Shown: in pieces, positions 762-60,961 of the stretch
How the letters are laid out: each line of letters starts with the position of its first letter
How positions within the stretch are numbered: position 1 is the first letter of the stretch
IMG/VR virus record: IMGVR_UViG_3300029267_004162
Coordinates: 62,001-126,000 of that record
DNA: 64,000 nt
Reading direction: 5' to 3' (one strand)
Position numbers and translations under genes: made by a program
Notes under the pieces: generated by a model
Seen by the model: the letters and a program-made list of their open reading frames with translations, nothing else
The model's database searches: none
What the model was told of the DNA's origin: nothing

Positions 762-1085
762 TTAATAAAGGCCCCTTTGATGGGTATCAAATTTCAGACT
801 AGCAAAAGTGCTGCTGACACCAGAGTGGGTGGTTTTTTTGAGGGCACGAAATTGAGACAAGGAATCAGCTACTGCCGCACAAAAACGAATTCCTTTCTTC
901 TCCATGTGTGCCTCCACACCGATGCACACTCCAGGTTTAGAAGCGTAAACCCCCACTAGTAGACCAATTTCTGGGGGTTCGGTGGAAGGATGAAAATGAT
1001 GCACATGAAAACACCCGCTTGTGGGAAGTTGAGCTAAAAACCGTCTGGTTAAATCTCTCGATAATTCCAAGATGAGTTTGTTCAT
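762..1085 (-). CDS. Hypothetical protein
   Basis: ORF track; 5' end lies inside the 79-bp direct repeat. Confidence 0.55.
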   Translation of the reverse strand: MNKLILELSRDLTRRFLAQLPTSGCFHVHHFHPSTEPPEIGLLVGVYASKPGVCIGVEAHMEKKGIRFCAAVADSLSQFRALKKTTHSGVSSTFASLKFDTHQRGLY

Positions 1086-1103
1086 AGCCTATTTCCATCC
1101 CGC
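1025..1103. repeat. 79-bp direct repeat, copy 1
   Basis: 77/79 identical to 2144-2222; both mismatches are synonymous in the MNKLILELSRDLTRRFLAQL frame. Confidence 0.95.
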
Positions 1104-1119
1104 GTTTTCATAGCCTCGT

Positions 1120-2143: not shown

Positions 2144-2222
2144 GAAGTTGAGCTAAAAACCGTCTAGTTAAATCTCTTGATAATTCCAAGATGAGTTTGT
2201 TCATAGCCTATTTCCATCCCGC
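2144..2222. repeat. 79-bp direct repeat, copy 2
   Basis: 77/79 identical to 1025-1103; overlaps a 24-aa truncated ORF (2130-2204) whose TAG overlaps the SD of the 333-aa gene. Confidence 0.95.
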
Positions 2223-2459
2223 TTGTTGTAATGTTTGCATGGCCTTCTGCCGGGTCTTATTATTCTTCTGATGTTTGGGGTCGGTAAATTCGATATCAAC
2301 AACCCGTTTTCCTGGCTTGGAAAGCCCAGCACAGATCACGTCTTTCCCTCGGTATACTTTTACGTAGCCATCCTCTTCAACCACTTTCCAAATAGTAGAT
2401 TCGAGAGAATAGAGAAGTTCTGTCCAACTCTTCTTCATGGTAGCGAATCCTAACCCCAT
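2208..2459 (-). CDS. Hypothetical protein (start may be 2438)
   Basis: ORF track; packed in the minus-strand operon. Confidence 0.6.
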   Translation of the reverse strand: MGLGFATMKKSWTELLYSLESTIWKVVEEDGYVKVYRGKDVICAGLSKPGKRVVDIEFTDPKHQKNNKTRQKAMQTLQQAGWK

Positions 2460-10385: not shown

Positions 10386-10726
10386 GCTAGGGCTTCACGA
10401 CAGGCCTCATTATGATGTTTAATTTCAAAATCTTGAACCACCATATCTTGAGGTGGCTTAAATCTCCCGATGGTTTCAACACCATTATAGACCCCAAAGA
10501 TCATCGTGACTATTTCATTCGCAAATTCTGTAGCTGATCGAAGGCCTTCGCCATGGAAAACTTCCATGTAGAAAGTCTTATCAACACCATCATGTGTTTT
10601 GGAAGCGGTCACATTGATGAAGGAGGAATCCACTTCTCTTTGGAGCCTGTATCCCCGACTCTTAAGGAGTTGTGAAACATCCCTTAGGAAAGTCCCAGCA
10701 AACTGGGTAACGATTTGAAGACTCAT
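10364..10726 (-). CDS. Hypothetical protein
   Basis: ORF track; ATGA coupling to the HNH gene. Confidence 0.65.
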   Translation of the reverse strand: MSLQIVTQFAGTFLRDVSQLLKSRGYRLQREVDSSFINVTASKTHDGVDKTFYMEVFHGEGLRSATEFANEIVTMIFGVYNGVETIGRFKPPQDMVVQDFEIKHHNEACREALAWFKQYA

Positions 10727-11151
10727 AATTTTCTTCCAATTTGAAGGTTAGCCTGTCGATCTAGGATAGCCTGGATAAACCGAACATAGCTGGTTTCTCC
10801 AGCCGCCCTGGATTGTTCCTTCAACTTGAGGATTGTTCCAGGAGATAGGTTCAAACGAACTTGTTTCGTCTCGACCTCATCTGGTTCAATTATCTTATCA
10901 GCGATCGTCCGGGCCAAACTGAAACACAGTTGATATTTGGGTGATCCTGGCATCCATTTGGTACTGACCAGGGAAGAAGCGGCTCCAGAATTGCTGATCA
11001 ATTTTAAAGCCACGGCATGAATCAACCGATGACAATTGGGGCAAATATCGGTTAGATTGTGTTGCTCATCGGATCCCCCAAAAGCCTGGGGGATCTTGTG
11101 ATGTTCTTCACCAACCGGACAAAGTTCGGTACAGAGACCGCACCGAATCAT
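10723..11151 (-). CDS. HNH endonuclease with C-terminal ribbon-helix-helix-like segment
   Basis: CGLC...HHKIPQAFGGSDEQHNLTDICPNCHRLIH; start moved to the ATG at 11151 (TGATG overlap). Confidence 0.85.
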   Translation of the reverse strand: MIRCGLCTELCPVGEEHHKIPQAFGGSDEQHNLTDICPNCHRLIHAVALKLISNSGAASSLVSTKWMPGSPKYQLCFSLARTIADKIIEPDEVETKQVRLNLSPGTILKLKEQSRAAGETSYVRFIQAILDRQANLQIGRKL

Positions 11152-11408
11152 CAGACGATAACTAGTTGACGCGACAGGATGGCGTCTTTTAGTTTCTTGT
11201 TGCCTTTGAGGACACCGCCTGGGGCTTTCTTGCACAAATCTACAGATTGACCGGATTGAATTATGATCCGGGTCTTCTTAAATTCACCACCTTTTTTATG
11301 GTCAATGAACTCAACCGGGATAGAAATCTCACCAGCTACGGTACTACGAACGGTGCAAGCACCAGCGTTCAACTTCTCAACTAATTTGCCAAACATTGAA
11401 GTTGCCAA
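11151..11408 (-). CDS. Small hypothetical protein downstream of tape measure
   Basis: 85 aa, TTG start with AGGAG SD; IQSGQSVDL...LKDAILSRQLVIV resembles the N-terminus of ORF 5674-6225. Confidence 0.6.
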   Translation of the reverse strand: MATSMFGKLVEKLNAGACTVRSTVAGEISIPVEFIDHKKGGEFKKTRIIIQSGQSVDLCKKAPGGVLKGNKKLKDAILSRQLVIV

Positions 11409-11419
11409 GGTACATCTCC

Positions 11420-14400
11420 TTATATACGAGTCTTCTTGGAATTCTGCTGAATAAAGTCGTTAGTTTTACTTAGAGTGTGTGGGAAATTCTTGACCTTAAT
11501 GACCAATTTTCCGTTCTCAAACGTGGCTTCTCCATCCACACCTTCTCCTCCTCTTTGTACTGATCCAGCGGAGGTTTCTTTAGGAGGTATGTACATTGTT
11601 GGAGGTTGATTATACGTGGTGGCTTCTCCGAATGGCCTGTCAGGCTTAATACTCGGATTAGGTGCCAAGGGTGACCCCGACAATGCTCTAGCTCGTAATA
11701 GATAAGCCTGGCTTTCCTCTCTGGCTTTTTCCAGATTCTCCTTGACTTTGCGAACCCATTCACTGTCCTTATTTTCATCCCCTTCCAATTCACCGAGAAG
11801 CTTTCTTTTTCTCTCGGCTATGGCTTCACGTTCTTTGGCATTGAGAGTATTGACATTCTCATCGGCCTTCATGTAACGTTCTTCCGCAGTCTGGGATTTT
11901 TCGGCTTGTTCTTGTAAACCTTGCAATCGATCAAACTGCTCAGAACGGAATTGCTGCTCATTAGCTAACAGCGATTGAGCCTTGTCCTCGCCAAACACGG
12001 TAGCAAAATATTTCTTGACTATCTCCGGATCAGCCCCTTCAGCCAACATCCCTAGGGCTTCATCGGTCATCCTAACCAATTCCTGCTGTTGCTTGAGTTC
12101 CTTTTCGGCTATCGCTTTCTTTTCCTTAGACTCAGTTATGCGAGTTGTTAATTCCTTAGCAGTAGCCACCCCAGCGTTTTTGAGCAGTTCCAATCGCTTT
12201 CTTTCGAAATCTCTCCTGATTCCGAAAGTAGCCTCATAGATCAAACTCTCTTCGGCTTCACCCAAGGCACGTTCACGCGTATCCTCTATTCGACGCTGTT
12301 CTCTATCTGCCTTCTTTTGAACCCCGGCTGCTTGACGACGACCCATTATGAGTTTCTGACCTTTTTCATACGCGGCTTTACGACCTAGAAGAGCATGCAC
12401 CTCTCCGGTTTCAGCTATTAACAGGGAACCCTTGGAGGTATACTCATTGATAGTCTGAATGGATTGCAATTTTTTCTGAAGTTCTTCATCGGTCAGTTCG
12501 GCTTCTTTCTTTCCTTTCAACGCCCCCAGTGTTCGGAAAGCAGTTTGTAGCATCAGCATTTTGTCATCAAGTTCGGTTACTTCTCTAAGGCCTTCATCAG
12601 TCCTAACCGTTTTAGAAAGGCCCCTTTGTTGTAACAGAATTCCAAATTGATCGGCTGACATCCGAGCGGATTCCTGTACCAAATCTTGGATGTCTTGATT
12701 ATATTTTTCGATTTCTCGCTTGGCTGTAGTTTTTCTACTACCATACGAATCCCCCTGCCAATCCTCCATAGCCGATTTACCCAATCCTGTGATAGATCCC
12801 TTATCCAGATACAAGTGTTCAAATTGGGCGGCTAATTCCAAACGTCGAGCGGCTGCTAGGGTTTCCTCTGCCAAAGCTGAATTACCAGCTTCTGCGGCTG
12901 CACGAAGTGAAGTGGAAAGGTCCATCAATTTCTGCTGAGTAATGGTAGTCTGTTCATTGGTTGCTATTTGAGCGGTAATTTTCTTTTGCTCATTTTCCAG
13001 ATATTGACGAGTTAGATCGTCGTTGTACCCGGCCAAACGTTGAGATACTTCGGCTTCTCTTATACGAAGCCGGGCCAAATCACGTTGGGCTTTTTTGGAT
13101 TTCTCTACGGCTTTGAGTTCAATCAAATCCGCTTCGGTTCGCATATTTTCTAGTTTAGCAGCTCGTTTGGGATCAGCCATGACATCCATAAATGCATCAG
13201 CGGCTGAGCCTCCCATTTTATGCCCCAATGCACCCCCACCAAAACCACCGATAATTCCACCGACCACACCACCAATAGCTGTTCCAATGATGGGGACCAC
13301 CGATCCTACAGCAGCCCCGGCCATAGCTCCAGTAGCCATTCCACCCATTCCGCCAATAACCCCACCTGCTGCACCCCCTACACCACGAGCAGCTCCACCA
13401 TATTGAGCGGTTGCTAATTCGGTCAACCCTGCGGTAGCCTCTTTCTTCTGATCTTGTAGAGTTCGCAAGAGTGCCAGATTACCATCGGCCTTGGCTTGTT
13501 CGATATCCAGATTGAGTTGAGAAACTTCTCTCTGCTTGATGGTGATTTGTTCGGTATCACTCAAAGCATCGATCACACCTTTAGTGGCTACGCCCATTTC
13601 CACTAGTCCCAATGCAAGTCCAATTGGTCCTAGAGCTTTACCGGCCCCTTTCAAGCCCACGGCGGCTCCACCTTGTAGTGCTCCAGCACCAGCTTTAGTC
13701 GCTTGTAAAGCTTTACCAGGTATCTGACCAGCGCCACGAATACGCGAGCCCCAACGAGCAGCAAAACCACCAGTTTTTGTTGCGGCTCCTGTTGCAGCGG
13801 CTCCCCCACCTCGACCACCAAGTTTACCTGCTAGACCCGGTATCCCACCGGCTTTTTGCAACAAAGCAGTCCCGGCCACAGTGGCAATTAGAGCATACAG
13901 TATACCCGTATGGCTCTTTAGTTCCTCCCAAATGGATTCCAGGTACATACCTGGTTTGGCTCGTCGGAGAATATCCGCGACTTCCTCCATAGGCTCAATA
14001 ACTTCTTCACGAGCCTCATCTCCCAGCAAACCCATGTCCTTGATGTGTTTTGTGAAATCCTCCCGGCCGTACTCAGCTACTTTGGCCAGCTCTAAAGCGG
14101 TTTCTTCAGTACCACCAATCATGGCTTTGATAGCCCGGACATTACTTTGCTGGGCGAATCCAAAGATTTCATCCAGCCACGTTCTATTTTCACCCATCAA
14201 TTGTTGTTGGGTCTTTTGATTCTTGCGAACTAGATCAAAATTAGCCTGACTGATCGTGTACATGTCTGCACGACCTTCCTTCATCAGGCCAGTTTGCATA
14301 GCCAACTGTTTAGCGACTATCAATTGCTGATTATATTCTTCAGTACCAGCCTTTAACCCAGCGGTAAGTTTGGTAACCAACACAGATTCAATTTCTGTAC

Positions 14401-18532: not shown

Positions 18533-19228
18533 CTAGTCGTAAGGGTCAAATGATACATCATAAGCGTAGAAGCACCAATCGACGTTTACCTTTTGGTATA
18601 GTAGGTTCTTAAAGGTAACCACAAAACCACAAACGTTGGGGTCGCAGTAAGGCACAACCTCTGATCTGGTTATGGAATCATCGTCGGTAATTATTACGAG
18701 GTCTGCCTCGGTGAAGTTTTGTGGGAACTCATATCCCTCAAACGCCACCCCATACACACCATTTTCTAATTGACCTACTACATAGCCATAACCATTGAAG
18801 GCGGTTCCGTCGTTATTGACACACCCTAGGGCTACAGCATAAAGGTCTTCGCCATCAGCGCCATCGGTACCATCAGCGCCATCTGTTCCATCAGCGCCAT
18901 CTGTTCCATCAGCGCCATCTGTTCCATCAGCGCCATCTGTTCCATCTGTTCCATCGGTACCATCTGTTCCATCAGCACCATCAGCACCATCAGCACCATC
19001 AGCACCATCAGCACCATCAGCACCAGTTTCACCCTGGGGTCCTGCTTCACCTTGAAGGCCGGGCAGGCCCTGAAGAAGAGGTGGTCTATTAGCCTCTTGG
19101 GCATTATCGATTACTTCACTAATGAATGCGGCAGTTCCGACTCCTAATAGGTCTACACCAGAGACGGGGCATCCCCCGCTAAGAACCGGAATAAGAACAA
19201 GTGCCAATACAATACAATAACGTTTCAT
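18533..19228 (-). CDS. Collagen-like lipoprotein
   Basis: Signal peptide MKRYCIVLALVLIPVLSGGC, 25 Gly-X-Y triplets, small C-terminal beta domain. Confidence 0.8.
   Translation of the reverse strand: MKRYCIVLALVLIPVLSGGCPVSGVDLLGVGTAAFISEVIDNAQEANRPPLLQGLPGLQGEAGPQGETGADGADGADGADGADGADGTDGTDGTDGTDGADGTDGADGTDGADGTDGADGTDGADGEDLYAVALGCVNNDGTAFNGYGYVVGQLENGVYGVAFEGYEFPQNFTEADLVIITDDDSITRSEVVPYCDPNVCGFVVTFKNLLYQKVNVDWCFYAYDVSFDPYD
18845..19069 (-). repeat. 9-bp-periodic collagen-coding repeat (mostly GAD/GTD)
   Basis: CCATCAGCA / CCATCTGTT / CCATCAGCG units on the plus strand; 225 bp = 25 triplets. Confidence 0.9.
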
Positions 19229-19239
19229 TGCGGATTCCT

Positions 19240-22200
19240 TTAGTAAACACCCTGTTCATCCGGGACCAAATAACGACCCAGGACCGGTGCGATGAACGCT
19301 TGAGCAGGAGTAATCTCTCCAAAACCAGACCGATTTACACCGGTAAACAATTTGAGGACACCTGCATCATTGACCAGGTTAACCAAGGCGACTAGACCCG
19401 AAGTAATAGGAGGTAGACCAGTGAGAGTAGCCCTACCAGCCTGCGGGGTAGACCAAGTAACACGAGTTACTGATTCGTCTATGTTTTCCACAGAGTTGGG
19501 GAATACATCGGTCCAGGTACCCATGACATCTTCATAGAACTTGGCAGTCACAACACGTGTGCCGAATCCATGTGTGATGGTCCATACGGTAGATGGAATG
19601 GTTTGATTATGAACCAATTGACTACCGGTGTCACTCTTAGGCTCAAGCAAGTCACCCTTGGGATAAGCAAGAGCGGTTACCTTATCGATCCACACCCCGG
19701 CTATAGGAATATCTGACACGAAGGGATAAGACTTCAAGTCCATGACTGCGGTATCACCACGCACATACAGGGATGGGTCAAGAGCAGCGTTGCGACCAGC
19801 ATCACCAATGATGTGTTTAACACCACCGAACTGAGGGAAGACCTGACCAATGGGGGTCAAGTAATTGGCACCCGGATTAGCTGTACCATCTGTTGTGGCT
19901 ATAAAGCGACCTTCAGATAAGAAGTAAAGCTGATCAGCGGTAGCTGTGGAGAGAAGCTGGAATTGTTCTTGTCTGGGCAACATGTTGTACCAGACTCGAA
20001 TTATATCTGATTGATCCAGGTGACGGCTTTGGATTACACCTAGGTAAGCACTAGGTGCCACACCTGTTACCAGACTACCGTTTCGTGTTCCCGTGGTGGT
20101 TTGATAAACAAAGCTGCCTACCTCCAAGTTGCCTCCGGCTGGAACCGGACCAACTCGATCACGGGTTAACATGCGAACGAAGCCACGCATTCCCGGACGC
20201 CAATCAAGATAAACCTGACCTGGTTCCATGGGATGAATGGTCAGGGTATCGCCCGGATTAATGGCTCCACTAAAAGCACTATCAACCTCGACTTCTTGCG
20301 TGGTGTGATCATAGGCAATGATGAGACGAAGCTCTCCAGCCGAACCGGTAGACGAGCCAATAACCTGTAACCATTCACCCACGTACGATCCAGCAACAGT
20401 AGAACCGCTGGTCAAGATGACATGCGTAGGAGCACCACCGGGTGTGGAGCTAGTGGCAACGCCATTGAAAGTAAAGTTATCCAGATTAACCAAGTCCCCA
20501 TCGATAAGGGGATAAGCAGTAGAACCATCTTCAGCTAGAAGGGGCAGGCCCTCGGTAACGTGGCGGAAACCACCGCCAGCGGGATAAAGAATTTGACACC
20601 AGATTACGCAAGTTTCACCGGAGTGAGCAGCGTGATCAGTTACATCGACCACACAAGCTGCTGAACTAGTGCCCAGGCCGCTCCAAGGAGTTGACAGAAC
20701 CACTGACGAAATGTTACCTGATGCGTCCACCCAATGCATAATTGGGGCTGTAGTATGGACATATGGGTCTCCGCTCAGAGAAGTTGTATTCAGAGTAACT
20801 GCTCGACTGGAGGGGTCATATGTCAGGAGATTAGCGGGATTTTCTGAGCCAGGTAGACCTTGAGTAAAGCGGCTCACCATATCCATGAGATTAGCTTTAT
20901 CTGACCAGTGATTTCGGCAGTTGTCTGGGAACATGGTCAGAGAAGCATCATTACCCTCATCCAGCCAAACACCGACTTGGTGTCCAGCACCGAAAGGATT
21001 GTTAGTCCCAATGCCCCCGCCTGTTAGCATGTTGGTACCTCGGATACCATTTCCAGAGATGGCACCAGAAGCAACACCAAACTCATCCTCTCCCCAATCC
21101 ACCACGTTTTGGCCAGACAGTAAAGCCTGCGACATGGATTCCATGATAGTTGAAAGGCCATTCAACAGCACTGTATGACGGAAGTCACAAATGTCCTGAG
21201 GATAGACCACATCAAAGAATTGGGCGTCTGGACGACCGTTCTGGCCACCACCACCGGCTAGACTGCCTTGGGTACCATCAGCGGTATTCAGGGCAGAACC
21301 ATTGCCATTGGTATGACTCCAAATGTCTTGGTTACGACGGTGGATACCACACAGAGGAATAGCGTAGACAAAACCATCGACAGTTTCTAGACCAGAACCA
21401 GTTTTGTCTCCAGCCCCACCAGTACCAGCCCGGAATAACATGGTATCACCCAACAGTTCATTCATCTGCTGGAAGATTTTACCAGAGACGGGTGCGCCAG
21501 TTGCGCCACGTGCCTCAACGGCTGCGTTATCGATACCGAATGGTGTAGCACCGGCTGGATCGAGCCAATCAGCACTGGCTGGACCATCAATTACACGAAC
21601 ACGATATCGGATTTGGAAATATTGGCCATTGGTTTGGTGGCCAATGGTACTTACTACGGCAGGATCCACAGGATCAGCAACTGAGCCACCAACGTAATCA
21701 ACGTTGCCATACGGGAAGAACGTTGGACTGGTAGTGCTGACTTCTTCCATCCAGACTTCTAGGAAGACCAAGTCCTGCCGATACCCAGTTCCAGGGGCGG
21801 CTGACAAAGTAATAGGGAATTCCCAACCGCTGGTATCGTCTTGAATCAACGACAGAAGAGTGCCATTGACCAGAGCCAATGGTGCTTCTCGGCCAATATC
21901 GTGGCGAGCGAGCAGGAATTGATTGGCGACGGTTAGATCACAATAGACACCAGGGAATGCGGGAGTAAGACCAGCAAAGGGTCTACGTGAACCCAAATTA
22001 GTGAAACCGCTCTTACCAAGTGCTTGGGCCAAACCGCGAAGACGACCCAAGGCGTTTTCACCACTAGCAAGTAAACTACTAGCAGAGGAAACAGGTTCCC
22101 AGGCGGAATTGCCACCCACATAGAAAACACCTGCACCAATGTCATACAGGAGCCTACCTAGATCGGCAGGATTACTGTAGGTAGGGAGAGAATTAGGTGG

Positions 22201-22263
22201 AACGGAAGTATCCACCCTCTGGACGATGATTGGCCCAGTTGCTTCAATTTTATGAAACTTCAT
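19240..22263 (-). CDS. Large tail fibre / baseplate-associated structural protein
   Basis: 1007 aa, G/S/T/P-rich; RQDLVFLEVW...YRVRVIDG and YAIPLCGIHRRN...RPDAQFFD motifs typical of myovirus fibre/baseplate proteins. Confidence 0.7.
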   Translation of the reverse strand: MKFHKIEATGPIIVQRVDTSVPPNSLPTYSNPADLGRLLYDIGAGVFYVGGNSAWEPVSSASSLLASGENALGRLRGLAQALGKSGFTNLGSRRPFAGLTPAFPGVYCDLTVANQFLLARHDIGREAPLALVNGTLLSLIQDDTSGWEFPITLSAAPGTGYRQDLVFLEVWMEEVSTTSPTFFPYGNVDYVGGSVADPVDPAVVSTIGHQTNGQYFQIRYRVRVIDGPASADWLDPAGATPFGIDNAAVEARGATGAPVSGKIFQQMNELLGDTMLFRAGTGGAGDKTGSGLETVDGFVYAIPLCGIHRRNQDIWSHTNGNGSALNTADGTQGSLAGGGGQNGRPDAQFFDVVYPQDICDFRHTVLLNGLSTIMESMSQALLSGQNVVDWGEDEFGVASGAISGNGIRGTNMLTGGGIGTNNPFGAGHQVGVWLDEGNDASLTMFPDNCRNHWSDKANLMDMVSRFTQGLPGSENPANLLTYDPSSRAVTLNTTSLSGDPYVHTTAPIMHWVDASGNISSVVLSTPWSGLGTSSAACVVDVTDHAAHSGETCVIWCQILYPAGGGFRHVTEGLPLLAEDGSTAYPLIDGDLVNLDNFTFNGVATSSTPGGAPTHVILTSGSTVAGSYVGEWLQVIGSSTGSAGELRLIIAYDHTTQEVEVDSAFSGAINPGDTLTIHPMEPGQVYLDWRPGMRGFVRMLTRDRVGPVPAGGNLEVGSFVYQTTTGTRNGSLVTGVAPSAYLGVIQSRHLDQSDIIRVWYNMLPRQEQFQLLSTATADQLYFLSEGRFIATTDGTANPGANYLTPIGQVFPQFGGVKHIIGDAGRNAALDPSLYVRGDTAVMDLKSYPFVSDIPIAGVWIDKVTALAYPKGDLLEPKSDTGSQLVHNQTIPSTVWTITHGFGTRVVTAKFYEDVMGTWTDVFPNSVENIDESVTRVTWSTPQAGRATLTGLPPITSGLVALVNLVNDAGVLKLFTGVNRSGFGEITPAQAFIAPVLGRYLVPDEQGVY

Positions 22264-22270
22264 CTAGTTT

Positions 22271-22321
22271 CTCCTTCGTGGTAACTTGTCCCGATTCAAC
22301 ACCATGTTGAATCGTCGAAGG
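22271..22321 (-). promoter_or_regulatory. Structured 5' leader occluding the SD, copy 1
   Basis: CCTTCG-A-[CGATTCAACA TGG TGTTGAATCG]-GGACAAGTTACCA-CGAAGG-AG, 7 nt before the ATG of the 1007-aa gene. Confidence 0.75.
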
Positions 22322-22330
22322 TACATAGAC

Positions 22331-23371
22331 CTAATGGACTGGTTTTTGTTGCCCCTTCCGACGAATAGCTTGATTCAAGGCTTTGTTCTGTGTGACGAGT
22401 TTACGAATTTCAGTTTGTCCGCTTGCTAGACCTTTGAGTATTTCCAGCATCCTATCGATAGATTTCTCCAATCTCTTGATGTCACCCTTACCCCGGAGAA
22501 AATCAAAGAGCCCCGATTGAATAGGAGTGCTTTCTACTATTTCTGATACCGTGGCTAGTTCAGCGTAGATTCGATCCCACGGATCTGGATGGCATTCGGC
22601 CAGCAACAAACATTGTGAGGCCAATACTGATTTGATAGGCCCGGACTGATTACCAATTACTTGAACTGGGCAATTTAGGGCCATGGCTACGTTTTGTGGA
22701 GCTTGTTGTTCAAATGGGCTACTGTGCCACTTCCAATACAAAGACCCCGACCCAGGCTGACTGAGCGTGTCCCTGATCTTCTGGCCATTATCTCGATAAG
22801 GGATTTTCTGGGAGCCAAACCAGAATTCGGCGATTTGGGATCCAGTTTGGCCTCGCCAAACATCAAACCCTTTCTTCCTGATTTCCTCTAGATCGGGGGT
22901 TTGATTGAGGAGGTGATAGGTAGCTTGGCTTGGGGACTCCATCACCTCTAGTACAATGGCATCCCCAGGTAAACCGGGGAATTCGACCAACAAACGATTT
23001 GGGAACCCTTTGGTTTTCTGTCCCAGAAACCTGGACTCCCGAAGTGGTTTCGGACCGATCATCTGTCTAACTGATTCAATAATCGGGGTTGCCCAGTTTT
23101 TTGGATTGGAAGAGACCACACGGCGCTGCTCACCAGCCAAAGTGATAACAGCCGAAAGGCTTTTATTTTTTTGTAATAGAACAACCAAATCACTAGGACG
23201 AAAATGGACACCAACTTCAAAAGGTTTCTTGCCCACAGCCGCTTTGTATAGCAGAGTGAGTATCCCTTTGTTTTGTTTAGCAGAATAAATCTCGGCTTGG
23301 TTAGTGACCAGCCTTATTTCGCGGAGCAAGGGCTTGACTAAATTGGTTTTGATTCGCTTTAAGACAGTCAT
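22331..23371 (-). CDS. Hypothetical protein
   Basis: 346-aa ORF, C-terminal coiled coil. Confidence 0.7.
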   Translation of the reverse strand: MTVLKRIKTNLVKPLLREIRLVTNQAEIYSAKQNKGILTLLYKAAVGKKPFEVGVHFRPSDLVVLLQKNKSLSAVITLAGEQRRVVSSNPKNWATPIIESVRQMIGPKPLRESRFLGQKTKGFPNRLLVEFPGLPGDAIVLEVMESPSQATYHLLNQTPDLEEIRKKGFDVWRGQTGSQIAEFWFGSQKIPYRDNGQKIRDTLSQPGSGSLYWKWHSSPFEQQAPQNVAMALNCPVQVIGNQSGPIKSVLASQCLLLAECHPDPWDRIYAELATVSEIVESTPIQSGLFDFLRGKGDIKRLEKSIDRMLEILKGLASGQTEIRKLVTQNKALNQAIRRKGQQKPVH

Positions 23372-23379
23372 TATAAGAC

Positions 23380-23961
23380 CTACTTATTGGGGGTACCGAT
23401 TGGACCCTCGGTCCGTTCCCTTGCCCATTTTCCACTATAACCTTTACCCCAGGTATTAGTGCCTTGGCGGAAAGTACGTCCACCCATTGTACGAACTTGC
23501 ATCCGACGATCACGAGCAGACATACCCGCCATGCCTTTGCCAAAACGACCCTGAGGACTGGTATTCCATCCGCGTCCCAAGTAGCTACGTTCGAATGGCT
23601 GGTGGGGCATGGTAGCTACGAATCCAATATAATGTAATTGGTTATCGAATAGCCCCTTTTCAATACCCACTCGAAGCTTGTCATACAACAGAGCAATTTT
23701 GTTGAGAGGATTCATGCCCACTTCGATCACAATAGGATCTGAAGCGAACTGGACTGCTGCTCTTGCTGGCCACGGCATAGTTCCGTGCTCAAATCGCATA
23801 GCAGACATCCAGTGGTGTGGAATGTCCTTGAATTGCGCACTGAGAGTATACTGCGGCATCATCAGATAGAAGATACCCCAGTCATTATGGAATCCCTCAA
23901 ATATGGGATTCGGAATATGCTGTAGTTGCAAATCAGGACGAATAGTGAGGGTCTGTGACAT
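23380..23961 (-). CDS. Hypothetical protein with Arg/Gly-rich tail
   Basis: Start moved to MSQTL (SD AAGGAG inside the structured leader). Confidence 0.7.
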   Translation of the reverse strand: MSQTLTIRPDLQLQHIPNPIFEGFHNDWGIFYLMMPQYTLSAQFKDIPHHWMSAMRFEHGTMPWPARAAVQFASDPIVIEVGMNPLNKIALLYDKLRVGIEKGLFDNQLHYIGFVATMPHQPFERSYLGRGWNTSPQGRFGKGMAGMSARDRRMQVRTMGGRTFRQGTNTWGKGYSGKWARERTEGPIGTPNK

Positions 23962-23969
23962 ACTAAAAA

Positions 23970-24015
23970 CTCCTTCGTGGTAACTTTGTCCCGGCACCAC
24001 TTAGCCGTCGAAGGA
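23970..24015 (-). promoter_or_regulatory. Structured 5' leader occluding the SD, copy 2
   Basis: TCCTTCG-A-[CGGC TAAGTGGT GCCG]-GGACAAAGTTACCA-CGAAGGA-G, 8 nt before the ATG at 23961. Confidence 0.75.
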
Positions 24016-24020
24016 AAGGG

Positions 24021-25289
24021 TTATTGTGATTGTTGTTCTATATAAGTCTTAATTCTGTTTACAAATTGCTTATAATTGGTCTTCCCCTCCGTAAAGACAA
24101 ACACTCTATAGCCTGCTTTTTTCAATTTCGACATTTTAGTTTTAATAGCCTGTTGTCTTTTCTTATCCCCATAGAGGAAATCGGACTGGTGCGCGGTTCC
24201 ATCATACTCCACCACCAGGTTTAATTTGTGATTAATGGCATCTACGACTGCCCGAAGATTATCTATGCCAGGGGATTTCCTTCGTTCAAAAAGAACACCT
24301 GTATCACGTTGCAAAGTGCTGATAAATGTTTCTTCGGCTCCACTACTAATCTTGGTCAGACCTAATCGCCGAATAAACTCTGACCAATTCCCAAAGACAT
24401 GTTCTGCATGGGCAGCAGTGTACCGTTTACTATGTTTGTTAAAGAGGGGACGAGTCAAGAACTCTCTTCCCGTGTCTTGCTTGATCAGTTTTACGATCCG
24501 GCGACCTTCCAACATCAAAGCCATATCTGGCTTCACCAAGGAACGGTCCATAATTTTGTGTGTTTTGACATCTTGAGTTTTGGTGATATAAGTGGTGTGT
24601 TGTTCCGGTACAAAAACATCTTCCCACCCCTTAGTGGTTTTACACCGAAAAATGTACCCCAACCGAGCGTGGCCATCTAGTAGAACAACTGAGTGTTTCT
24701 CATCAGCTTTCTTAGTTTTACGAAGTTTATGGCCTTTTCGTAAACTTAACTTGGTTTGAATCCGGTCACGACCCGTATTGAGGCCATAAGCGATAGCCTC
24801 TGGTACCCACACCTTAATTTTGTCGTCTACGAATTGAACTTGAACCAAACCACGTTTGGGATTAAAATCAATTGTCTTTGCCCAGAACCATGCTAATCCA
24901 CCTGTCTTAGCAGCTACGGGATTGTCATTTTTATCGAGCCAGATTTTGACCTTCTTATTTAAGGATCGTTTAAGAGTCCACTTACGGGCCTTGTCTTGAA
25001 CTACTCGATAAACTGTCATAGGACGAATAGTAGAGTATTCACCACCAGGACTAGCCATTCCTACTGCCATCGCTTGGAGATCATGGCGAGTATAAAATCC
25101 TGGAGCAGGACCAAGCCCAATCTTCTCTAAAGCCTCGACAAACCGAGAGAATTGACTCCGCTTGGGAAACCTATGCACATATTCTGGCCAAGTAGTAGAG
25201 GTGGTGGGTCGACCTTTTCCCGGCCAATCCAAAAACTCTTCTAGGTGAATACTGGTACCTATGCGTTGTAGTAGCTGAGTGAAAGTCAT
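24021..25289 (-). CDS. Protein with C-terminal Vsr/DUF559-like PD-(D/E)xK nuclease domain (homing-endonuclease-like)
   Basis: AEHVFGNWSEFIRRLGL repeat-like segment, then SSGAEE...VDAINHKLNLVVEYDGTAH...K...LKKAGYRVFVF. Confidence 0.65.
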   Translation of the reverse strand: MTFTQLLQRIGTSIHLEEFLDWPGKGRPTTSTTWPEYVHRFPKRSQFSRFVEALEKIGLGPAPGFYTRHDLQAMAVGMASPGGEYSTIRPMTVYRVVQDKARKWTLKRSLNKKVKIWLDKNDNPVAAKTGGLAWFWAKTIDFNPKRGLVQVQFVDDKIKVWVPEAIAYGLNTGRDRIQTKLSLRKGHKLRKTKKADEKHSVVLLDGHARLGYIFRCKTTKGWEDVFVPEQHTTYITKTQDVKTHKIMDRSLVKPDMALMLEGRRIVKLIKQDTGREFLTRPLFNKHSKRYTAAHAEHVFGNWSEFIRRLGLTKISSGAEETFISTLQRDTGVLFERRKSPGIDNLRAVVDAINHKLNLVVEYDGTAHQSDFLYGDKKRQQAIKTKMSKLKKAGYRVFVFTEGKTNYKQFVNRIKTYIEQQSQ

Positions 25290-27505: not shown

Positions 27506-28096
27506 CTATCCATTGGATGTGAGATGACGAACCACATAGTTAATAGTAACCGAAGCTCGAACGGCGGGGTCAGATTCTGCCCCAAATTCATCGAGGGTCT
27601 TTTCTGTAAACCAACAACCACGATAGGTCCAAACACGATGATTGCCGTTTCCGCGCATCCAGACTTCATTACACTGGAAAGCTTGGGTTTGATCGCAAAG
27701 GTCGGACCATTCGACTGTCGGGTTGTCACGACCTTGGCCAACTGGGGCAAACCCCTGATCAACCGAGGCACCAAAAATGGTTTCTACTTCAGACAACCAG
27801 GTTTCAACGCGAGTACAAGTAATCTGACGACCAGATTCTTTACCAGGAACATAATCGATTGGACGGCCCCACGTTTGACTATTCAGCTCGTAAATGTGTA
27901 TACCTTCACGAGAAGCAAACGTAGGATTCCACCCTTGAATCCGACCAATGATCTCACCAGCCGCACCATTGGCCCCAACTTGAATGGAGATGCCGTGGTA
28001 AGTTTTGGTCATGTCCAGAACAACAGTCTGGTCAGCGGCGCCAGTTTGGACACCAAAAGTATTGGCTGCTGGATGCGGTGTGGCTTGAGCTGCCAA
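27506..28096 (-). CDS. Tail tube protein
   Basis: 196 aa, SD AGGAGG; IGRIQGWNP...IYELNS...IDYVPG...ITCTRVETW...WTYRGCWF pattern of contractile tail tubes. Confidence 0.7.
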   Translation of the reverse strand: MAAQATPHPAANTFGVQTGAADQTVVLDMTKTYHGISIQVGANGAAGEIIGRIQGWNPTFASREGIHIYELNSQTWGRPIDYVPGKESGRQITCTRVETWLSEVETIFGASVDQGFAPVGQGRDNPTVEWSDLCDQTQAFQCNEVWMRGNGNHRVWTYRGCWFTEKTLDEFGAESDPAVRASVTINYVVRHLTSNG

Positions 28097-28126
28097 GGTA
28101 CACCTCCTTATTCTAGAGAACTAACC

Positions 28127-31199: not shown

Positions 31200-32315
31200 C
31201 TAGATCTTCACCCCGCGAGCAATCGCATTGACATTAGGCAGACACGTCGCGTAGATTGACGAGAGGAACCAACCCTTGGCGGGACGACCAATATTGTACT
31301 GGTCAACGGGCTCACTCTTCAATGGCTGACGCACAAAGTGCTTGCCAAGTGACTTCGGTGTACTGAGGAAATAGGTTTCACCCGGACGCAAGACGCGGAG
31401 GTCATGATTGACGAACGCATCAGTAATCAGGGTAACACCCAAAATCGAACCCAAAACACCAGTCAGAACCAACTCATGCTTAGTCACTGGATCGAACCAG
31501 TTGGCGAAATCCGTTTGACCAATGATGTCATTCCAAAGGTCTGAAGCCAGCAGGGCTGTGCTGACAGGCAGACCACGAGACGCGATTAGGTTGCGCAACG
31601 TTTGGAAGAACGCCGGGGTAAAGGTGGAGAAGAAAATTTGGTTTCCACTAGCGCTAACCGCAACATTCAAGAGGCGACGCAATACCGCGTCTTCCTGAAC
31701 CTGCACACGCTCTTGGCCATCTTCCAGGCGCTCGGTGAGGAGATCACCAGCAACTTGGCTGATTTCCTTGTCTTCCACCAGTACATGACTGGTGATGTAA
31801 TACTCTGGCGGGTAGAAATACTGCTCACGAGGAGTGGTAACGAATGGCTTAAAGCCACCCTGACCCTCGACGTGGGCTACCGCCCAATTCTTCCGAATAC
31901 GAGCGCGAGGAAGCTGACCAGCCGCCAATTCAGATTCATCGATGACCCGACGCAGGAAACCCTGACGACGAACGTGATCATAGATCAAATCCGAAACTTC
32001 TTCACCCAAGAGACGCCACTTTTCCCCAGTCGTATCACTGAGTGCTTCAGAAAGCAACTCGATACGCTCTTCCGAAAGAGTTTGAGGGGTCTGTTCCATG
32101 ACTTCGCCGCGAGCGGCCATGTCAATTAGACCATTAATGGCAGAAAGGAGTTCAGTGCGATTACCGGCATTGAATTCGCCATTAGCACCCACCATCGCGG
32201 TGGCTGATTGGCGAACCTTGCCAGTCTTTGGATCCCTGAAGGTACCCTTCAGGGAAGTAACGGGTTCGCCCTTTTTGGTGACGAACTTACGACGATATGG
32301 ATTGTTCACTTTCAT
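31200..32315 (-). CDS. Major capsid protein (HK97-fold, large-phage type)
   Basis: 371 aa from MKVNNPY (SD GAGG); RRQGFLRRV...PPEYYIT...QVQEDAVLRRLL...LGSILGVTLITD pattern; follows scaffold/decoration genes and has its own terminator. Confidence 0.8.
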   Translation of the reverse strand: MKVNNPYRRKFVTKKGEPVTSLKGTFRDPKTGKVRQSATAMVGANGEFNAGNRTELLSAINGLIDMAARGEVMEQTPQTLSEERIELLSEALSDTTGEKWRLLGEEVSDLIYDHVRRQGFLRRVIDESELAAGQLPRARIRKNWAVAHVEGQGGFKPFVTTPREQYFYPPEYYITSHVLVEDKEISQVAGDLLTERLEDGQERVQVQEDAVLRRLLNVAVSASGNQIFFSTFTPAFFQTLRNLIASRGLPVSTALLASDLWNDIIGQTDFANWFDPVTKHELVLTGVLGSILGVTLITDAFVNHDLRVLRPGETYFLSTPKSLGKHFVRQPLKSEPVDQYNIGRPAKGWFLSSIYATCLPNVNAIARGVKI

Positions 32316-32398
32316 ATCCTCACAGTTGTTGGTTAATCGTTCACTAGGTACACGGGTGTGAATCAGTAACAACAGTGAAATTACAGCAGAGATAAATA

Positions 32399-32446
32399 GC
32401 GGGATGAGGATTCGAACCTACGAATAGACCCAGAACATCTTCCCGC
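32399..32446 (-). ncRNA. 48-nt mini tRNA-like element (acceptor + D-like hairpin + T loop, no anticodon arm)
   Basis: GCGGGA/TCCCGC stem enclosing AGAT-GTTCTGG-GTCT and AGG-TTCGAAT-CCT. Confidence 0.45.
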
Positions 32447-32451
32447 GATAC

Positions 32452-32477
32452 AGGTGGGGGCAAAATTGCCCCCACCT
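32452..32477. terminator. Strong GC-rich hairpin (terminator or processing stem)
   Basis: AGGTGGGGGCAA-AA-TTGCCCCCACCT perfect inverted repeat; U-tract weak. Confidence 0.6.
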
Positions 32478-52216: not shown

Positions 52217-52254
52217 TTTCGCCTTGGCTCTGATTTATCCCTTACTCCATCCCC

Positions 52255-52283
52255 ATTATATCAGATGGGAACCCTTTTGTCAA
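52255..52283 (-). promoter_or_regulatory. Consensus sigma70 promoter with extended -10
   Basis: TTGACA-AAAGGGTTCCCATCTGA(17)-TATAAT. Confidence 0.9.
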
Positions 52284-53205
52284 GTAGTCTAGACAACTTC
52301 TTTGAGACTTCTTGTAGGATTTCTTGGGTACCCTCAGTTGGCTCATTTCCTAGGAGGATTTCTTCCCACAATGGGCTGGAAAGAGCGTCCAAAACACCTC
52401 CGGGGAGCTGCCTCCCTGGACGACCACTAAACATCCGGGGAGTGCCTTCCACAGTCGAGGCGCCGCAGAATACTAACACTTCGCCGTACATCTTCATGTC
52501 TAAACCCAAAGAAGTGGCTTGGTCTTGAAAAGTTTGGTGTAATTTTTTAACCCCCTGTACTAAATCCCGAATTGGAATTAAGAATTTCCGCTCTAACATG
52601 ATACAGGGTGAAGGCTGATCCGTGGTGATTGATTCTGGTATAAGGGTGGGTTCTATCCCTAAGATAGATTGGATCAATCCAGATTCAGCAGACCCAAGGA
52701 ATTGAATGGCTTCTTCATAGTGGTGTCTGGCTTCCCCAGCGGTTATGTTTAAAGCAGTAGCTATGGATTCAATGGACCGATGTTCATCAATATCACAATG
52801 TGATGCTTTGTATTTGGTATAGCCCGGACATTCCGTTTTCTGACATGGGGTTATCATGATAATTTCCCCAAGGGGAGGACAAAAAAACCATTCTTCTCTT
52901 GGTAAAATACTCTGCCCGATTTTTACCAAGTATTTGCATAATCTAGGATAGTATTCGTAAAGAGAAGACACTGTCTCTGCAACACTTGGAGTCAATTCAT
53001 CTAGAAAATCAAAGAATTCATCCGAGAATAAAGCCCAGAAATCATATTTGTACAATTTACTTTTGGGGATAGTCAGAGAGGGTAAATCATATGTTTTTGC
53101 GATCTGATTGAAAGCTCGCATGTCCAAGTTGATCAGACACATGAAGACAAGAATATCTAGACGATTTCCAGGTACGTCATACTTTTTATACAGATCATCA
53201 AACAC
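52261..53205 (-). CDS. Hypothetical protein with sigma region 4-like HTH
   Basis: SIESIATALNITAGEARHHYEEAIQFL preceded by a Cys cluster. Confidence 0.6.
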   Translation of the reverse strand: MFDDLYKKYDVPGNRLDILVFMCLINLDMRAFNQIAKTYDLPSLTIPKSKLYKYDFWALFSDEFFDFLDELTPSVAETVSSLYEYYPRLCKYLVKIGQSILPREEWFFCPPLGEIIMITPCQKTECPGYTKYKASHCDIDEHRSIESIATALNITAGEARHHYEEAIQFLGSAESGLIQSILGIEPTLIPESITTDQPSPCIMLERKFLIPIRDLVQGVKKLHQTFQDQATSLGLDMKMYGEVLVFCGASTVEGTPRMFSGRPGRQLPGGVLDALSSPLWEEILLGNEPTEGTQEILQEVSKKLSRLLDKRVPI

Positions 53206-60893: not shown

Positions 60894-60932
60894 AGCAGTG
60901 TCCCCAAAAAAGCCACGTTACCAAAAAACCCC

Positions 60933-60961
60933 ATTATACCACAAAAGAGTCCCTTTGTCAA
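60933..60961 (-). promoter_or_regulatory. Consensus sigma70 promoter with extended -10
   Basis: TTGACA-AAGGGACTCTTTTGTGG(17)-TATAAT. Confidence 0.9.

What the first reader, a model, noticed from the sequence alone, without database searches (positions are those of the whole stretch)
22271..24015. Twice-repeated, covarying RNA leader that hides the Shine-Dalgarno sequence (riboswitch- or operator-like motif)
Seen: two short intergenic gaps (22271-22321, 23970-24015) share the layout CCUUCG-A-[P2 hairpin]-GGACAA(A)GUUACCA-CGAAGG-AG-N7/8-AUG. P1 pairs with the AAGGAG SD. P2 differs in length and sequence (9-10 bp versus 4 bp) yet pairs in both. Both P2 tips carry UGGU, complementary to ACCA in the conserved joining strand, a possible pseudoknot. 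Conserved structure with variable stem sequence indicates selection at the RNA level. I do not recognise it as a known riboswitch or ribozyme. Inference: a ligand- or protein-controlled translational switch for virion genes.
Basis: partly seen in the sequence, partly recalled or inferred. Interest (0 to 1): 0.8.

Follow-up and report, generated by a model that had tools for sequence, protein, structure and literature searches.

The report
Duplicated ribosome-site-hiding leader in jumbo phage
Two genes in the virion-gene block of an uncultured 262-kb phage are preceded by the same roughly 50-base RNA leader, whose outer stem pairs with the ribosome-binding site; it is real, but it occurs only in this phage and nothing shows that it senses a ligand.

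Summary
Two copies (window 22321..22271 and 24014..23970) share CCUUCG-A-[hairpin]-GGGACAA(A)GUUACCA-CGAAGG-AG-N7/8-AUG. They sit just upstream of a 1007-aa and a 193-aa ORF in the late block of a 262-kb metagenomic phage.

- **Similarity:** the flanks are 32/33 identical, the centre is 8/19, and similarity stops exactly at the motif edges.
- **Structure:** both copies fold as P1 + P2. P1 covers AAGG(AG) of the Shine-Dalgarno sequence and adds only about -5 kcal/mol.
- **Covariation:** this is thin, with two sequences, six invariant P1 pairs and two compensatory P2 pairs.
- **Pseudoknot:** the UGGU/ACCA match exists but is weak (-2.5 kcal/mol). By helix geometry (inference) it cannot coexist with P1.
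- **Distribution:** there is no Rfam match. Scans of 2.9 M viral contigs, 241 M metagenome records and 185,579 genomes found no other true copy. A covariance model found no third copy in 74 kb. The only homologue of the 193-aa gene lacks the leader.

The most likely reading is a lineage-specific, duplicated translation-start leader that partly occludes the ribosome site. It would be opened by the ribosome terminating 6-9 nt upstream or by a phage factor. A duplication scar left by cassette insertion is a serious rival. A riboswitch is unlikely.

The parts
22271..22321 (-). Leader copy 1, 51 nt. P1 5' strand is 22321-22316; linker A is 22315; P2 hairpin is 22314-22292 (9 bp, loop AUGGU at 22305-22301); conserved joining strand GGACAAGUUACCA is 22291-22279; P1 3' strand CGAAGG is 22278-22273; AG is 22272-22271.
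23970..24016 (-). Leader copy 2, 45 nt plus 2 nt. Optional extra pairs are UU at 24016-24015 with AG at 23971-23970. P1 5' strand is 24014-24009; linker A is 24008; P2 hairpin is 24007-23992 (4 bp, loop UAAGUGGU at 24003-23996); joining strand GGACAAAGUUACCA is 23991-23978; P1 3' strand CGAAGG is 23977-23972.
19240..22263 (-). 1007-aa ORF that starts 7 nt after copy 1. It is an orphan with partial weak matches to large phage proteins and is followed by a collagen-like tail fibre gene (18533-19228).
23380..23961 (-). 193-aa ORF that starts 8 nt after copy 2. It is an orphan with a Gly/Arg-rich basic C-terminal third. One remote homologue exists (P0044, 38% identity).
22331..23371 (-). 346-aa orphan ORF whose TAG stop (22333-22331) lies 9 nt 5' of P1 of copy 1. 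Together with the 193-aa ORF it forms the two-gene block bracketed by the two leader copies.
24021..25289 (-). 422-aa ORF whose TAA stop (24023-24021) lies 6 nt 5' of P1 of copy 2. It gives borderline Pfam matches to DUF559 (Vsr-like nuclease) and HNH_repeat, has low G+C (0.43), and is a lead for a homing-endonuclease-like gene.

Best explanation
The element is a phage-specific, duplicated translation-start leader that acts in cis on the late polycistronic mRNA.

An anti-SD-like CCUUCG pairs with CGAAGG of the AAGGAG ribosome-binding site (P1). P1 encloses a hairpin of free length (P2) and a 13-14-nt unpaired strand that is identical in both copies. With P1 closed, the ribosome site of the 193-aa and 1007-aa genes is partly occluded, so free 30S subunits start there poorly.

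Opening most likely comes from the ribosome that terminates on the upstream ORF. Its stop codon lies 9 nt (copy 1) or 6 nt (copy 2) from P1, within reach of the ribosome's mRNA channel, and this would couple the downstream gene to the upstream one. A phage- or host-encoded factor that binds the conserved strand may contribute as well.

Shown: two sharply bounded copies, the predicted fold, SD overlap, the stop-codon spacing, and absence elsewhere. Inferred: that P1 forms in vivo, that it lowers initiation, and what opens it.
For: - There are two exact-framework copies on the coding strand, with none expected by chance. Each fills an otherwise unusually long gap (59 and 67 nt), where most gaps in this operon are about 10 nt.
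- P1 + P2 is the minimum-energy fold of both copies.
- P1 adds -4.7 kcal/mol, or -6.1 with the 8-bp form in copy 2.
- The cost of opening the SD is 6.3 kcal/mol for copy 2 (rank 3 of 46 leaders in the window) and 4.3 kcal/mol for copy 1 (rank 15 of 46).
- Divergence is strongly uneven: flanks 32/33 identical, centre 8/19 (p = 1.2e-5). The centre still pairs in both copies, with two compensatory pairs.
- The stop codons of the upstream ORFs lie 9 and 6 nt from P1.
- No promoter-like or terminator-like site was found at either place.
- The pair is the top-scoring one among 2,628 leader pairs in the window.
- Precedent in kind exists: conserved sequences with an embedded SD, plus inverted repeats, upstream of a subset of genes in Cluster K mycobacteriophages (PMC3203893).
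Against: - There are only two copies, both in one genome, and no natural variants. Four assemblies are identical here, so selection on structure cannot be demonstrated.
- P1 has no covariation.
- The occlusion is modest. By predicted opening energy, copy 1 is not an outlier among leaders of the window.
- The fold z-score of copy 2 is only -1.44.
- The one homologue of the 193-aa gene, in a related phage, has no such leader.
- No RNA data could be found.
- Coupling a virion-block gene to a nuclease-like upstream gene is not an obvious design.
Confidence: 0.45

Rival explanations
1. The pair is a duplication scar with no regulatory meaning beyond carrying an ordinary ribosome-binding site. A gene cassette (193 aa + 346 aa, or part of it) entered at a leader by recombination and the leader was duplicated, so that the two copies now bracket the cassette. 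The central palindrome later changed through hairpin-templated (quasi-palindrome) mutation, which keeps pairing without selection.
For: - The two copies are direct repeats that bracket exactly two orphan genes.
- The same genome has a clear precedent. The 333-aa gene at 1120-2121 sits inside an 84-nt, 95%-identical direct duplication. That duplication repeats the leader and the first 20 codons of the 107-aa gene at 762-1085.
- A second duplicated start region exists at 11400-11423 and 28088-28111.
- Nuclease-like, probably mobile genes lie in this operon: the 422-aa gene next to copy 2, and an HNH gene at 10723-11235.
- The motif is absent from every other sequence searched.
Against: - Zero substitutions in 32 flank positions sit beside a centre that differs at 11 of 19 aligned positions. 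That is hard to obtain by neutral drift and would need a hairpin-specific mutation process.
- The similarity ends exactly at the outer edge of P1 and at GGAG. It does not run into coding sequence, as it does in the 84-nt duplication.
- A 23-nt perfect direct repeat 1.7 kb apart invites deletion, yet it is kept in all four assemblies.
Confidence: 0.28
2. The element is a small riboswitch. A ligand binds the junction formed by P1, P2 and the conserved strand, or stabilises the loop-strand pairing, and shifts the balance between an SD-closed and an SD-open state. This would resemble the SAM-III (SMK box) design, in which an SD:anti-SD helix is stabilised by the ligand.
For: - It has a compact architecture with an invariant unpaired strand between two helices.
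- Both loops carry UGGU, complementary to ACCA. The chance is 0.16% if the loops are independent.
- No known family matches, so it would be new.
Against: - No occurrence was found in 2.9 M viral contigs, 241 M metagenome records or 185,579 prokaryotic genomes. All other core matches lack P1, P2 and a start codon.
- The controlled genes are orphans in a virion block and have no link to any metabolite.
- If TGGTG is shared by descent, the chance of the loop match rises to about 7-16%.
- The bare duplex is only -2.5 kcal/mol.
- The pairing is geometrically incompatible with P1 (inference).
Confidence: 0.06
3. The element is a DNA-level site. The conserved 23-bp block would be a recognition or cleavage site, or a recombination hotspot, for the adjacent DUF559/HNH_repeat nuclease-like protein or another phage enzyme. 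The RNA fold would then be incidental.
For: - Copy 2 directly abuts the 3' end of the nuclease-like gene.
- Free-standing homing endonuclease genes usually sit next to their target (established knowledge).
- The copy beside the nuclease gene differs by a 1-nt insertion within the block. That could be an immunity change (speculation).
Against: - The nuclease assignment is borderline: 20.5 bits against a cut-off of 20.6, and atlas scores below 0.9.
- The element is strictly oriented with the genes and placed at a fixed distance from start codons.
- It includes the SD and its complement, which a DNA site would not require.
- The outer inverted repeat has variable spacing (31 vs 37 nt), which is unsuited to a dimeric DNA binder.
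Confidence: 0.08
4. The element is an RNA processing or stability element. An endoribonuclease (RNase III- or RNase E-type, or a phage enzyme that cuts at GGAG as T4 RegB does) cleaves at the structure. This would separate the messages and either free or destroy the ribosome site.
For: - It has an intergenic position within a long polycistronic unit and conserved structure plus sequence.
- Phage T7 uses repeated intergenic hairpins with asymmetric internal loops as RNase III sites (established knowledge).
Against: - The stacked helices total only about 12 bp in copy 2, below the roughly 20 bp that RNase III needs (established knowledge).
- No transcript data are available.
- Only two junctions of about 70 in the window carry it.
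Confidence: 0.06

Closest known systems
Start-associated sequences (SAS) and extended SAS of Cluster K mycobacteriophages (Pope et al. 2011, PMC3203893)
   Same: These are phage-specific, asymmetric conserved sequences that contain the Shine-Dalgarno core. They lie a few nucleotides upstream of the start codons of a subset of genes, in one orientation. About half are accompanied by upstream inverted repeats with a variable spacer, and they are absent from the host. A role in translation initiation has been proposed but not demonstrated.
   Different: - The sequence is different (the SAS consensus is GGGATAGGAGCCC).
- There are many SAS sites: 93 were identified across the Cluster K genomes examined, against two copies here.
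- SAS lie in the non-structural half of those genomes, whereas this element is in the virion block.
- The authors found little support for RNA hairpins in ESAS. Here both copies pair perfectly, and the outer helix pairs with the SD itself.
SD-sequestering leader hairpins that enforce translational coupling or act as protein operators (MS2 coat/replicase operator, T4 gp32, gp43 and RegA operators, Mu Com-mom); from established knowledge
   Same: In these, a short helix includes the ribosome-binding site of a phage gene. It is opened by an upstream translating ribosome, or closed or opened by a phage protein. A stop codon within ribosome reach of the helix is the classical layout for coupling.
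   Different: None of those operators shares this sequence or its three-part layout of anti-SD, free hairpin and 13-14-nt invariant strand followed by the SD. No cognate protein is identified here and nothing has been tested.
SAM-III (SMK box) riboswitch, RF01767; from established knowledge
   Same: The anti-SD at the 5' end pairs with the SD at the 3' end, enclosing a hairpin and a joining strand. It is a translational switch of about 50 nt.
   Different: It gives no score even at E <= 10 in the Rfam scans. There is no metK-type gene context, and the element occurs in one phage only.
freshwater-2 RNA, RF02980
   Same: This is the best, though non-significant, Rfam alignment: a hairpin followed by AAGGAGAAA..AUG upstream of a gene in environmental sequence.
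   Different: The score is 18.4 bits against a gathering score of 49.9 (E = 0.57). Thirty-six model positions are missing, and copy 2 gives no hit at all.

Membership tests
Any Rfam 15 family (4227 models, including the preQ1-I/II/III, SAM-II/III/V, guanidine and fluoride riboswitches and the small ribozymes) | Covariance-model score at or above the family's gathering score | tested here: not met
   There were 0 matches in the whole window at gathering thresholds. At E <= 10 on each gap only noise appeared, the best being 18.4 bits against 49.9.
Riboswitch (as a class) | The aptamer recurs, with covariation, across several genes and taxa | tested here: not met
   Exact-core scans of viral, metagenome and genome collections returned only this phage plus chance matches lacking P1, P2 and a start codon. 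These scans require an exact core, so diverged members could be missed.
Riboswitch (as a class) | Controlled genes make, import or use the ligand | tested here: not met
   The downstream genes are orphans in a head/tail block, with no metabolic or transport domain.
Riboswitch (as a class) | Direct, specific ligand binding that changes the fold | not testable with these tools
   This needs in-line probing, SHAPE or ITC.
SD-occluding translational leader / operator | A helix on the mRNA strand includes Shine-Dalgarno bases at a functional distance from the start codon | tested here: met
   P1 pairs CGAAGG of AAGGAG, 7-8 nt before the AUG. It is the minimum-energy structure in both copies. P1 contributes -4.7 to -6.1 kcal/mol.
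SD-occluding translational leader / operator | Occlusion stronger than in ordinary leaders of the same genome | tested here: inconclusive
   The SD opening cost is 6.3 kcal/mol (rank 3 of 46) for copy 2, but 4.3 kcal/mol (rank 15 of 46) for copy 1.
SD-occluding translational leader / operator | Disrupting the helix raises translation and compensatory change restores control | not testable with these tools
   This needs reporter fusions or toeprinting.
Translational coupling through helix unwinding | The upstream ORF stops within ribosome reach (about 10-15 nt) of the occluding helix, on the same strand | tested here: met
   TAG lies 9 nt before P1 in copy 1. TAA lies 6 nt before P1 in copy 2, or 4 nt before the 8-bp form.
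H-type pseudoknot (UGGU loop with ACCA strand) | Loop-to-strand complementarity present in every copy | tested here: met
   UGGU is in both loops and ACCA is in both joining strands. The chance is 0.16% if the loops are independent and about 7-16% if TGGTG is shared by descent.
H-type pseudoknot (UGGU loop with ACCA strand) | Pairing supported by covariation, with enough stability and a geometry compatible with the rest of the fold | tested here: not met
   Both partners are invariant, so there is no covariation. The bare duplex is -2.5 kcal/mol. ACCA is contiguous with the P1 3' strand, while the P1 5' strand joins the base of a 9-bp P2 through one A. P1 and this pairing therefore cannot coexist in copy 1 (inference from A-form geometry).
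Cluster K mycobacteriophage SAS/ESAS | 13-bp consensus GGGATAGGAGCCC 3-7 bp before the start codons of many genes in a genome | tested here: not met
   The sequence is different and there are only two copies. It is the same kind of element, not a member of that family.
Intrinsic terminator / sigma-70 promoter | A G+C-rich hairpin followed by a U-run, or -35/-10 hexamers at a fixed spacing | tested here: not met
   No site is listed at either gap. No T-run follows P2 or P1. The spacing of the conserved blocks differs by 6 nt between the copies.

The most novel reading that the evidence does not exclude
The leader is a new two-state translational switch. The invariant strand ends in ACCA, directly abutting the SD strand of P1. 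This ACCA can pair with the UGGU of the P2 loop only when P1 is open. A phage protein, a host factor or a small ligand that stabilises the loop-strand pairing would then pull the SD out of P1 and switch on two late genes together. The 193-aa product itself is a candidate autoregulator, because its C-terminal third is rich in Gly and Arg.
Probability: 0.1. Interest if true: 0.6.

Novelty: new member of a known kind. Interest (0 to 1): 0.3.

Why it matters
If the leader is functional, it would be a compact, sequence-defined handle by which an uncultured jumbo phage sets the translation of two late genes in step. That would add a structured counterpart to the still unexplained start-associated sequences of mycobacteriophages.

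As it stands, the value is modest. The element is one more candidate cis-regulatory RNA, confined to one phage lineage and without comparative or experimental support.

The finding is also a useful caution. Two copies in one genome with a replaced hairpin look like covariation. The same genome shows that gene insertion duplicates start regions, which can produce the same picture.

Tried and rejected
**RNA family and further-copy searches**
- Rfam gave nothing at gathering thresholds and only noise in E-value mode on both gaps.
- No tRNA or tmRNA gene was found in the window.
- A covariance model of the two copies, run with filters off, found no third copy. The sequences searched were the window, 10 kb beyond its start (L030) and the loci of relatives.

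**Database scans for the motif core**
- The scans covered viral contigs, metagenome contigs and prokaryotic genomes. Every hit outside this phage lacked P1, P2 and a start codon.

**Search for relatives**
- blastn against 50,697 phage records gave no match.
- Protein-based locus searches with the 193-aa, 1007-aa and head proteins returned only the source contig.
- Word-indexed protein searches found no close relatives of the 193-aa or 1007-aa proteins.
- The exhaustive HMMER search found one homologue of the 193-aa protein. Its contig has no motif and no synteny.
- The closest head-protein relatives sit on contigs that are too short or not syntenic.

**Variation and expression**
- Near-identical assemblies show no variation in the motif.
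- No RNA run was listed.

**Function of the neighbouring proteins**
- PHROGs, Pfam, NCBIfam, PDB sequence search, the atlas and a single-sequence AlphaFold model (pLDDT 32) gave nothing usable. The exception is the nuclease-like lead for the 422-aa protein.

**Ideas rejected**
- *Conserved upstream ORF through the motif.* Copy 1 has a 20-codon ORF ending TAG-ATG, but copy 2 has no start codon in that frame.
- *Paralogy of the two upstream genes.* They show no similarity.
- *Promoter or terminator.* No site is present at either gap.
- *Stop-codon readthrough or frameshift stimulator.* The frames do not join the downstream ORF (read).
Full report
**What is there**

All long ORFs of the window lie on the minus strand and are tightly packed. 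Most gaps are about 10 nt.

- Copy 1 (window 22321..22271): CCUUCG-A-[CGAUUCAAC-AUGGU-GUUGAAUCG]-GGACAAGUUACCA-CGAAGG-AG, then 7 nt and the AUG (22263) of a 1007-aa ORF.
- Copy 2 (window 24014..23970): CCUUCG-A-[CGGC-UAAGUGGU-GCCG]-GGACAAAGUUACCA-CGAAGG-AG, then 8 nt and the AUG (23961) of a 193-aa ORF.

A descriptor of the shared frame matches only these two places and matched none of 100 shuffles. The 15-mer GTTACCACGAAGGAG occurs exactly twice.

The homology is sharply bounded. The flanks have 32 identical positions and one 1-nt indel. The centre has 8 identical and 11 different positions (Fisher p = 1.2e-5). Identity is at random level (8/30 and 6/30) just outside the motif.

**Fold**

Both copies fold to P1 + P2 as the minimum-energy structure.

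- The z-score against shuffles is -3.85 for copy 1 but only -1.44 for copy 2.
- P1 contributes -4.7 kcal/mol in both copies. The contribution is -6.1 kcal/mol in copy 2 if two further pairs (UU with AG) are counted.
- P1 covers AAGG of the AAGGAG ribosome site in copy 1 and all six bases in copy 2.
- Against 46 leaders of the window with a recognisable SD, the cost of opening the SD is 6.3 kcal/mol (rank 3) for copy 2 and 4.3 kcal/mol (rank 15) for copy 1.

The site is therefore hidden, but only moderately.

**How strong is the covariation?**

On the two-row alignment, the six P1 pairs never vary. Of the four P2 pairs that both copies share, two are changed on both sides (A-U to G-C and U-A to C-G). 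The shuffle control cannot discriminate with two sequences (122/500). Copy 1 has five further pairs.

This is compatible with selection for a hairpin. It is also compatible with hairpin-templated mutation of a palindrome, which preserves pairing without selection (established knowledge).

The UGGU/ACCA match is real as sequence. If the two loops are independent, a match of both to one site of the joining strand has a chance of 0.16%. Both loops share TGGTG, however, and if that is common descent the chance is about 7-16%. The bare duplex is worth only -2.5 kcal/mol.

Geometry also argues against the pseudoknot as drawn (my inference):

- ACCA is covalently contiguous with the 3' strand of P1.
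- The 5' strand of P1 is joined to the base of P2 by a single A.
- A helix formed at the tip of a 9-bp P2 would place the two strands of P1 about 13 bp apart.
- P1 and the loop pairing therefore cannot coexist in copy 1, and could coexist only with fraying in copy 2.

If the pairing is real, it is an alternative, P1-open state.

**Where it comes from, and whether it exists elsewhere**

The window is part of IMGVR_UViG_3300029267_004162, a 262,650-bp metagenomic phage contig. Near-identical contigs are seen in sediment and seawater metagenomes. The motif and its surroundings are identical in all of them.

Evidence that this is a late or virion block:
- a major head protein gene at 31200-32372;
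- a collagen-like tail fibre gene at 18533-19228, directly after the 1007-aa ORF;
- a 1455-aa protein with a tail-lysin-like segment.

The 193-aa, 346-aa and 1007-aa proteins are orphans.

Search results for the element itself:
- Rfam 15 gives no match at gathering thresholds and only noise at E <= 10.
- Exact-core scans of 2.9 M viral contigs, 241 M metagenome records and one genome each of 185,579 prokaryotic species return only this phage as a true instance. All other hits lack P1, P2 and a start codon.
- A covariance model of the two copies, run without filters, finds no third copy. It covered the 64-kb window, 10 further kb of the genome and the loci of the nearest relatives.
- An exhaustive HMMER search of 1.84 billion representatives finds one homologue of the 193-aa protein, P0044 (38% identity, E = 1.5e-19). 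It comes from the same sample as the closest head-protein relative (55% identity). Its leader has no trace of the motif and the neighbourhood is not syntenic.
- No RNA-seq run could be listed.

**Context that bears on origin**

The two copies are direct repeats that bracket exactly two genes, the 193-aa and 346-aa ORFs.

The gene just upstream of copy 2 (422 aa, G+C 0.43) gives borderline matches to DUF559 (20.5 bits against a cut-off of 20.6) and HNH_repeat. Its nearest atlas clusters are phage proteins with those same families, all below the 0.9 lead threshold. I treat it as a lead for a homing-endonuclease-like gene. A clear HNH gene lies elsewhere in the same operon, at 10723-11235.

The genome also shows that insertion duplicates start regions:
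- The 333-aa gene at 1120-2121 sits inside an 84-nt, 95%-identical direct duplication. That duplication repeats the leader and the first 20 codons of the 107-aa gene at 762-1085.
- A 24-nt SD-plus-start block is repeated at 11400-11423 and 28088-28111.

Duplication by cassette insertion is therefore a realistic origin for the leader pair.

**What it most likely does**

Several facts point to translation initiation:
- The element is strictly on the mRNA strand.
- It ends at the SD and contains the SD's complement.
- It sits at a fixed distance from two start codons.
- It shows no promoter or terminator signature.
- The spacing of its conserved blocks differs by 6 nt between the copies, which speaks against a fixed-geometry DNA site.

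I therefore read it as a cis-acting leader that partly occludes the ribosome site. The upstream stop codons lie 9 and 6 nt from P1. That is within the stretch of mRNA held by a terminating ribosome (established knowledge of the mRNA channel and helicase position). Translational coupling by unwinding is thus the simplest way to open it.

The perfectly conserved 13-14-nt unpaired strand is not explained by coupling. It suggests a sequence-specific partner, such as a protein, or the alternative loop pairing. That part is inference. Confidence in the overall reading is 0.45.

The main rival (0.28) is that the pair is a duplication scar whose only function is an ordinary ribosome site. A riboswitch (0.06), a DNA target of the neighbouring nuclease-like protein (0.08) and an RNA processing site (0.06) are less likely, for the reasons given under each rival.

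**Comparison with known systems**

In kind, the element is closest to the start-associated sequences and extended SAS of Cluster K mycobacteriophages. Those are phage-private conserved blocks with an embedded SD, just upstream of the starts of some genes. About half have upstream inverted repeats with a variable spacer, and their function is unknown (PMC3203893). This element is not a member: the sequence differs, there are two copies rather than many, and it lies in the virion block. Unlike ESAS, its repeats pair perfectly as RNA.

In mechanism, it resembles classical SD-occluding operators and coupling hairpins of phages. In layout, it resembles the SAM-III (SMK box) design, in which an anti-SD:SD helix encloses a hairpin. 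It fails the Rfam membership test for every family.

**Verdict**

A translational leader is plausible. 'Covarying' and 'pseudoknot' are over-read, and 'riboswitch' is unlikely. I rate it a new member of a known kind, with an interest score of 0.3.

Noticed in passing
window 1025-1108 and 2144-2227 (minus-strand genes 762-1085 and 1120-2121): An 84-nt direct repeat, 95% identical, brackets the 333-aa gene. The upstream copy encodes a 24-codon stub whose first 20 residues (MNKLILELSRDLTRRFLAQL) equal the N-terminus of the 107-aa gene that begins in the downstream copy. The 333-aa gene was therefore inserted with duplication of the recipient's leader and start.
   Followed up: partly
window 11400-11423 and 28088-28111 (minus strand): A second duplicated translation-start block, ATAAGGAG(A/G)TGTACCTTGGCA(A/G)CT, is 22/24 identical. 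It lies at the TTG starts of an 85-aa gene and the 196-aa gene. Here AAGG of the SD can pair with the CCUU that follows it. Similarity stops a few nucleotides into the ORFs.
   Followed up: partly
window 32399-32446 (minus strand), in the 179-nt gap before the major head protein gene: A tRNA-like minihelix is present: a 6-bp acceptor-like stem (GCGGGA/UCCCGC) encloses a GGTTCGAATCC T-loop-like arm. It follows a strong 11-bp G+C-rich hairpin at 32453-32476. Neither ARAGORN nor Rfam calls it. It may be a tRNA remnant or mimic.
   Followed up: partly
window 24021-25289 and 10723-11235 (minus strand): Two nuclease-like, probably selfish genes lie inside the virion operon. One is a 422-aa protein with borderline DUF559 and HNH_repeat matches. 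The other is a 170-aa protein with a clear HNH domain.
   Followed up: partly
window 52251-52286 and 60929-60964 (minus strand): Two near-consensus sigma-70-type promoters (TTGACA, 17 nt, TATAAT, then GGGG) share a 35-nt frame upstream of the genes that start at 52216 and 60893. They suggest host-RNA-polymerase promoters of a bacterial host.
   Followed up: no
window 22264-22326 (minus strand): A 20-codon ORF (ATG at 22326) runs through the whole of copy 1 and ends with a TAG directly abutting the ATG of the 1007-aa gene. Copy 2 keeps the same-frame TAG 1 nt before its ATG but has no start codon in that frame, so the ORF is not conserved.
   Followed up: yes
L030 13527-14648 (about 4.5 kb beyond the window start, opposite strand): A 373-aa gene with a Sigma70_r3 domain is a candidate phage-encoded sigma factor. 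It lies just past the end of the virion operon, next to a 955-aa glycosyltransferase/methyltransferase fusion.
   Followed up: no
window 18816-19061 (minus-strand gene 18533-19228): A long run of 9-nt periodic repeats encodes the collagen-like Gly-X-Y tract of the putative tail fibre protein.
   Followed up: no
L029 576-655 (relative phage from SRR12983609): In the related phage, the homologue of the 193-aa gene is preceded by a 334-nt gap instead of the leader. Read by eye, the opposite strand of that gap carries what looks like a tRNA gene, but no tRNA scan was run on this locus. The two upstream genes are divergently oriented.
   Followed up: no
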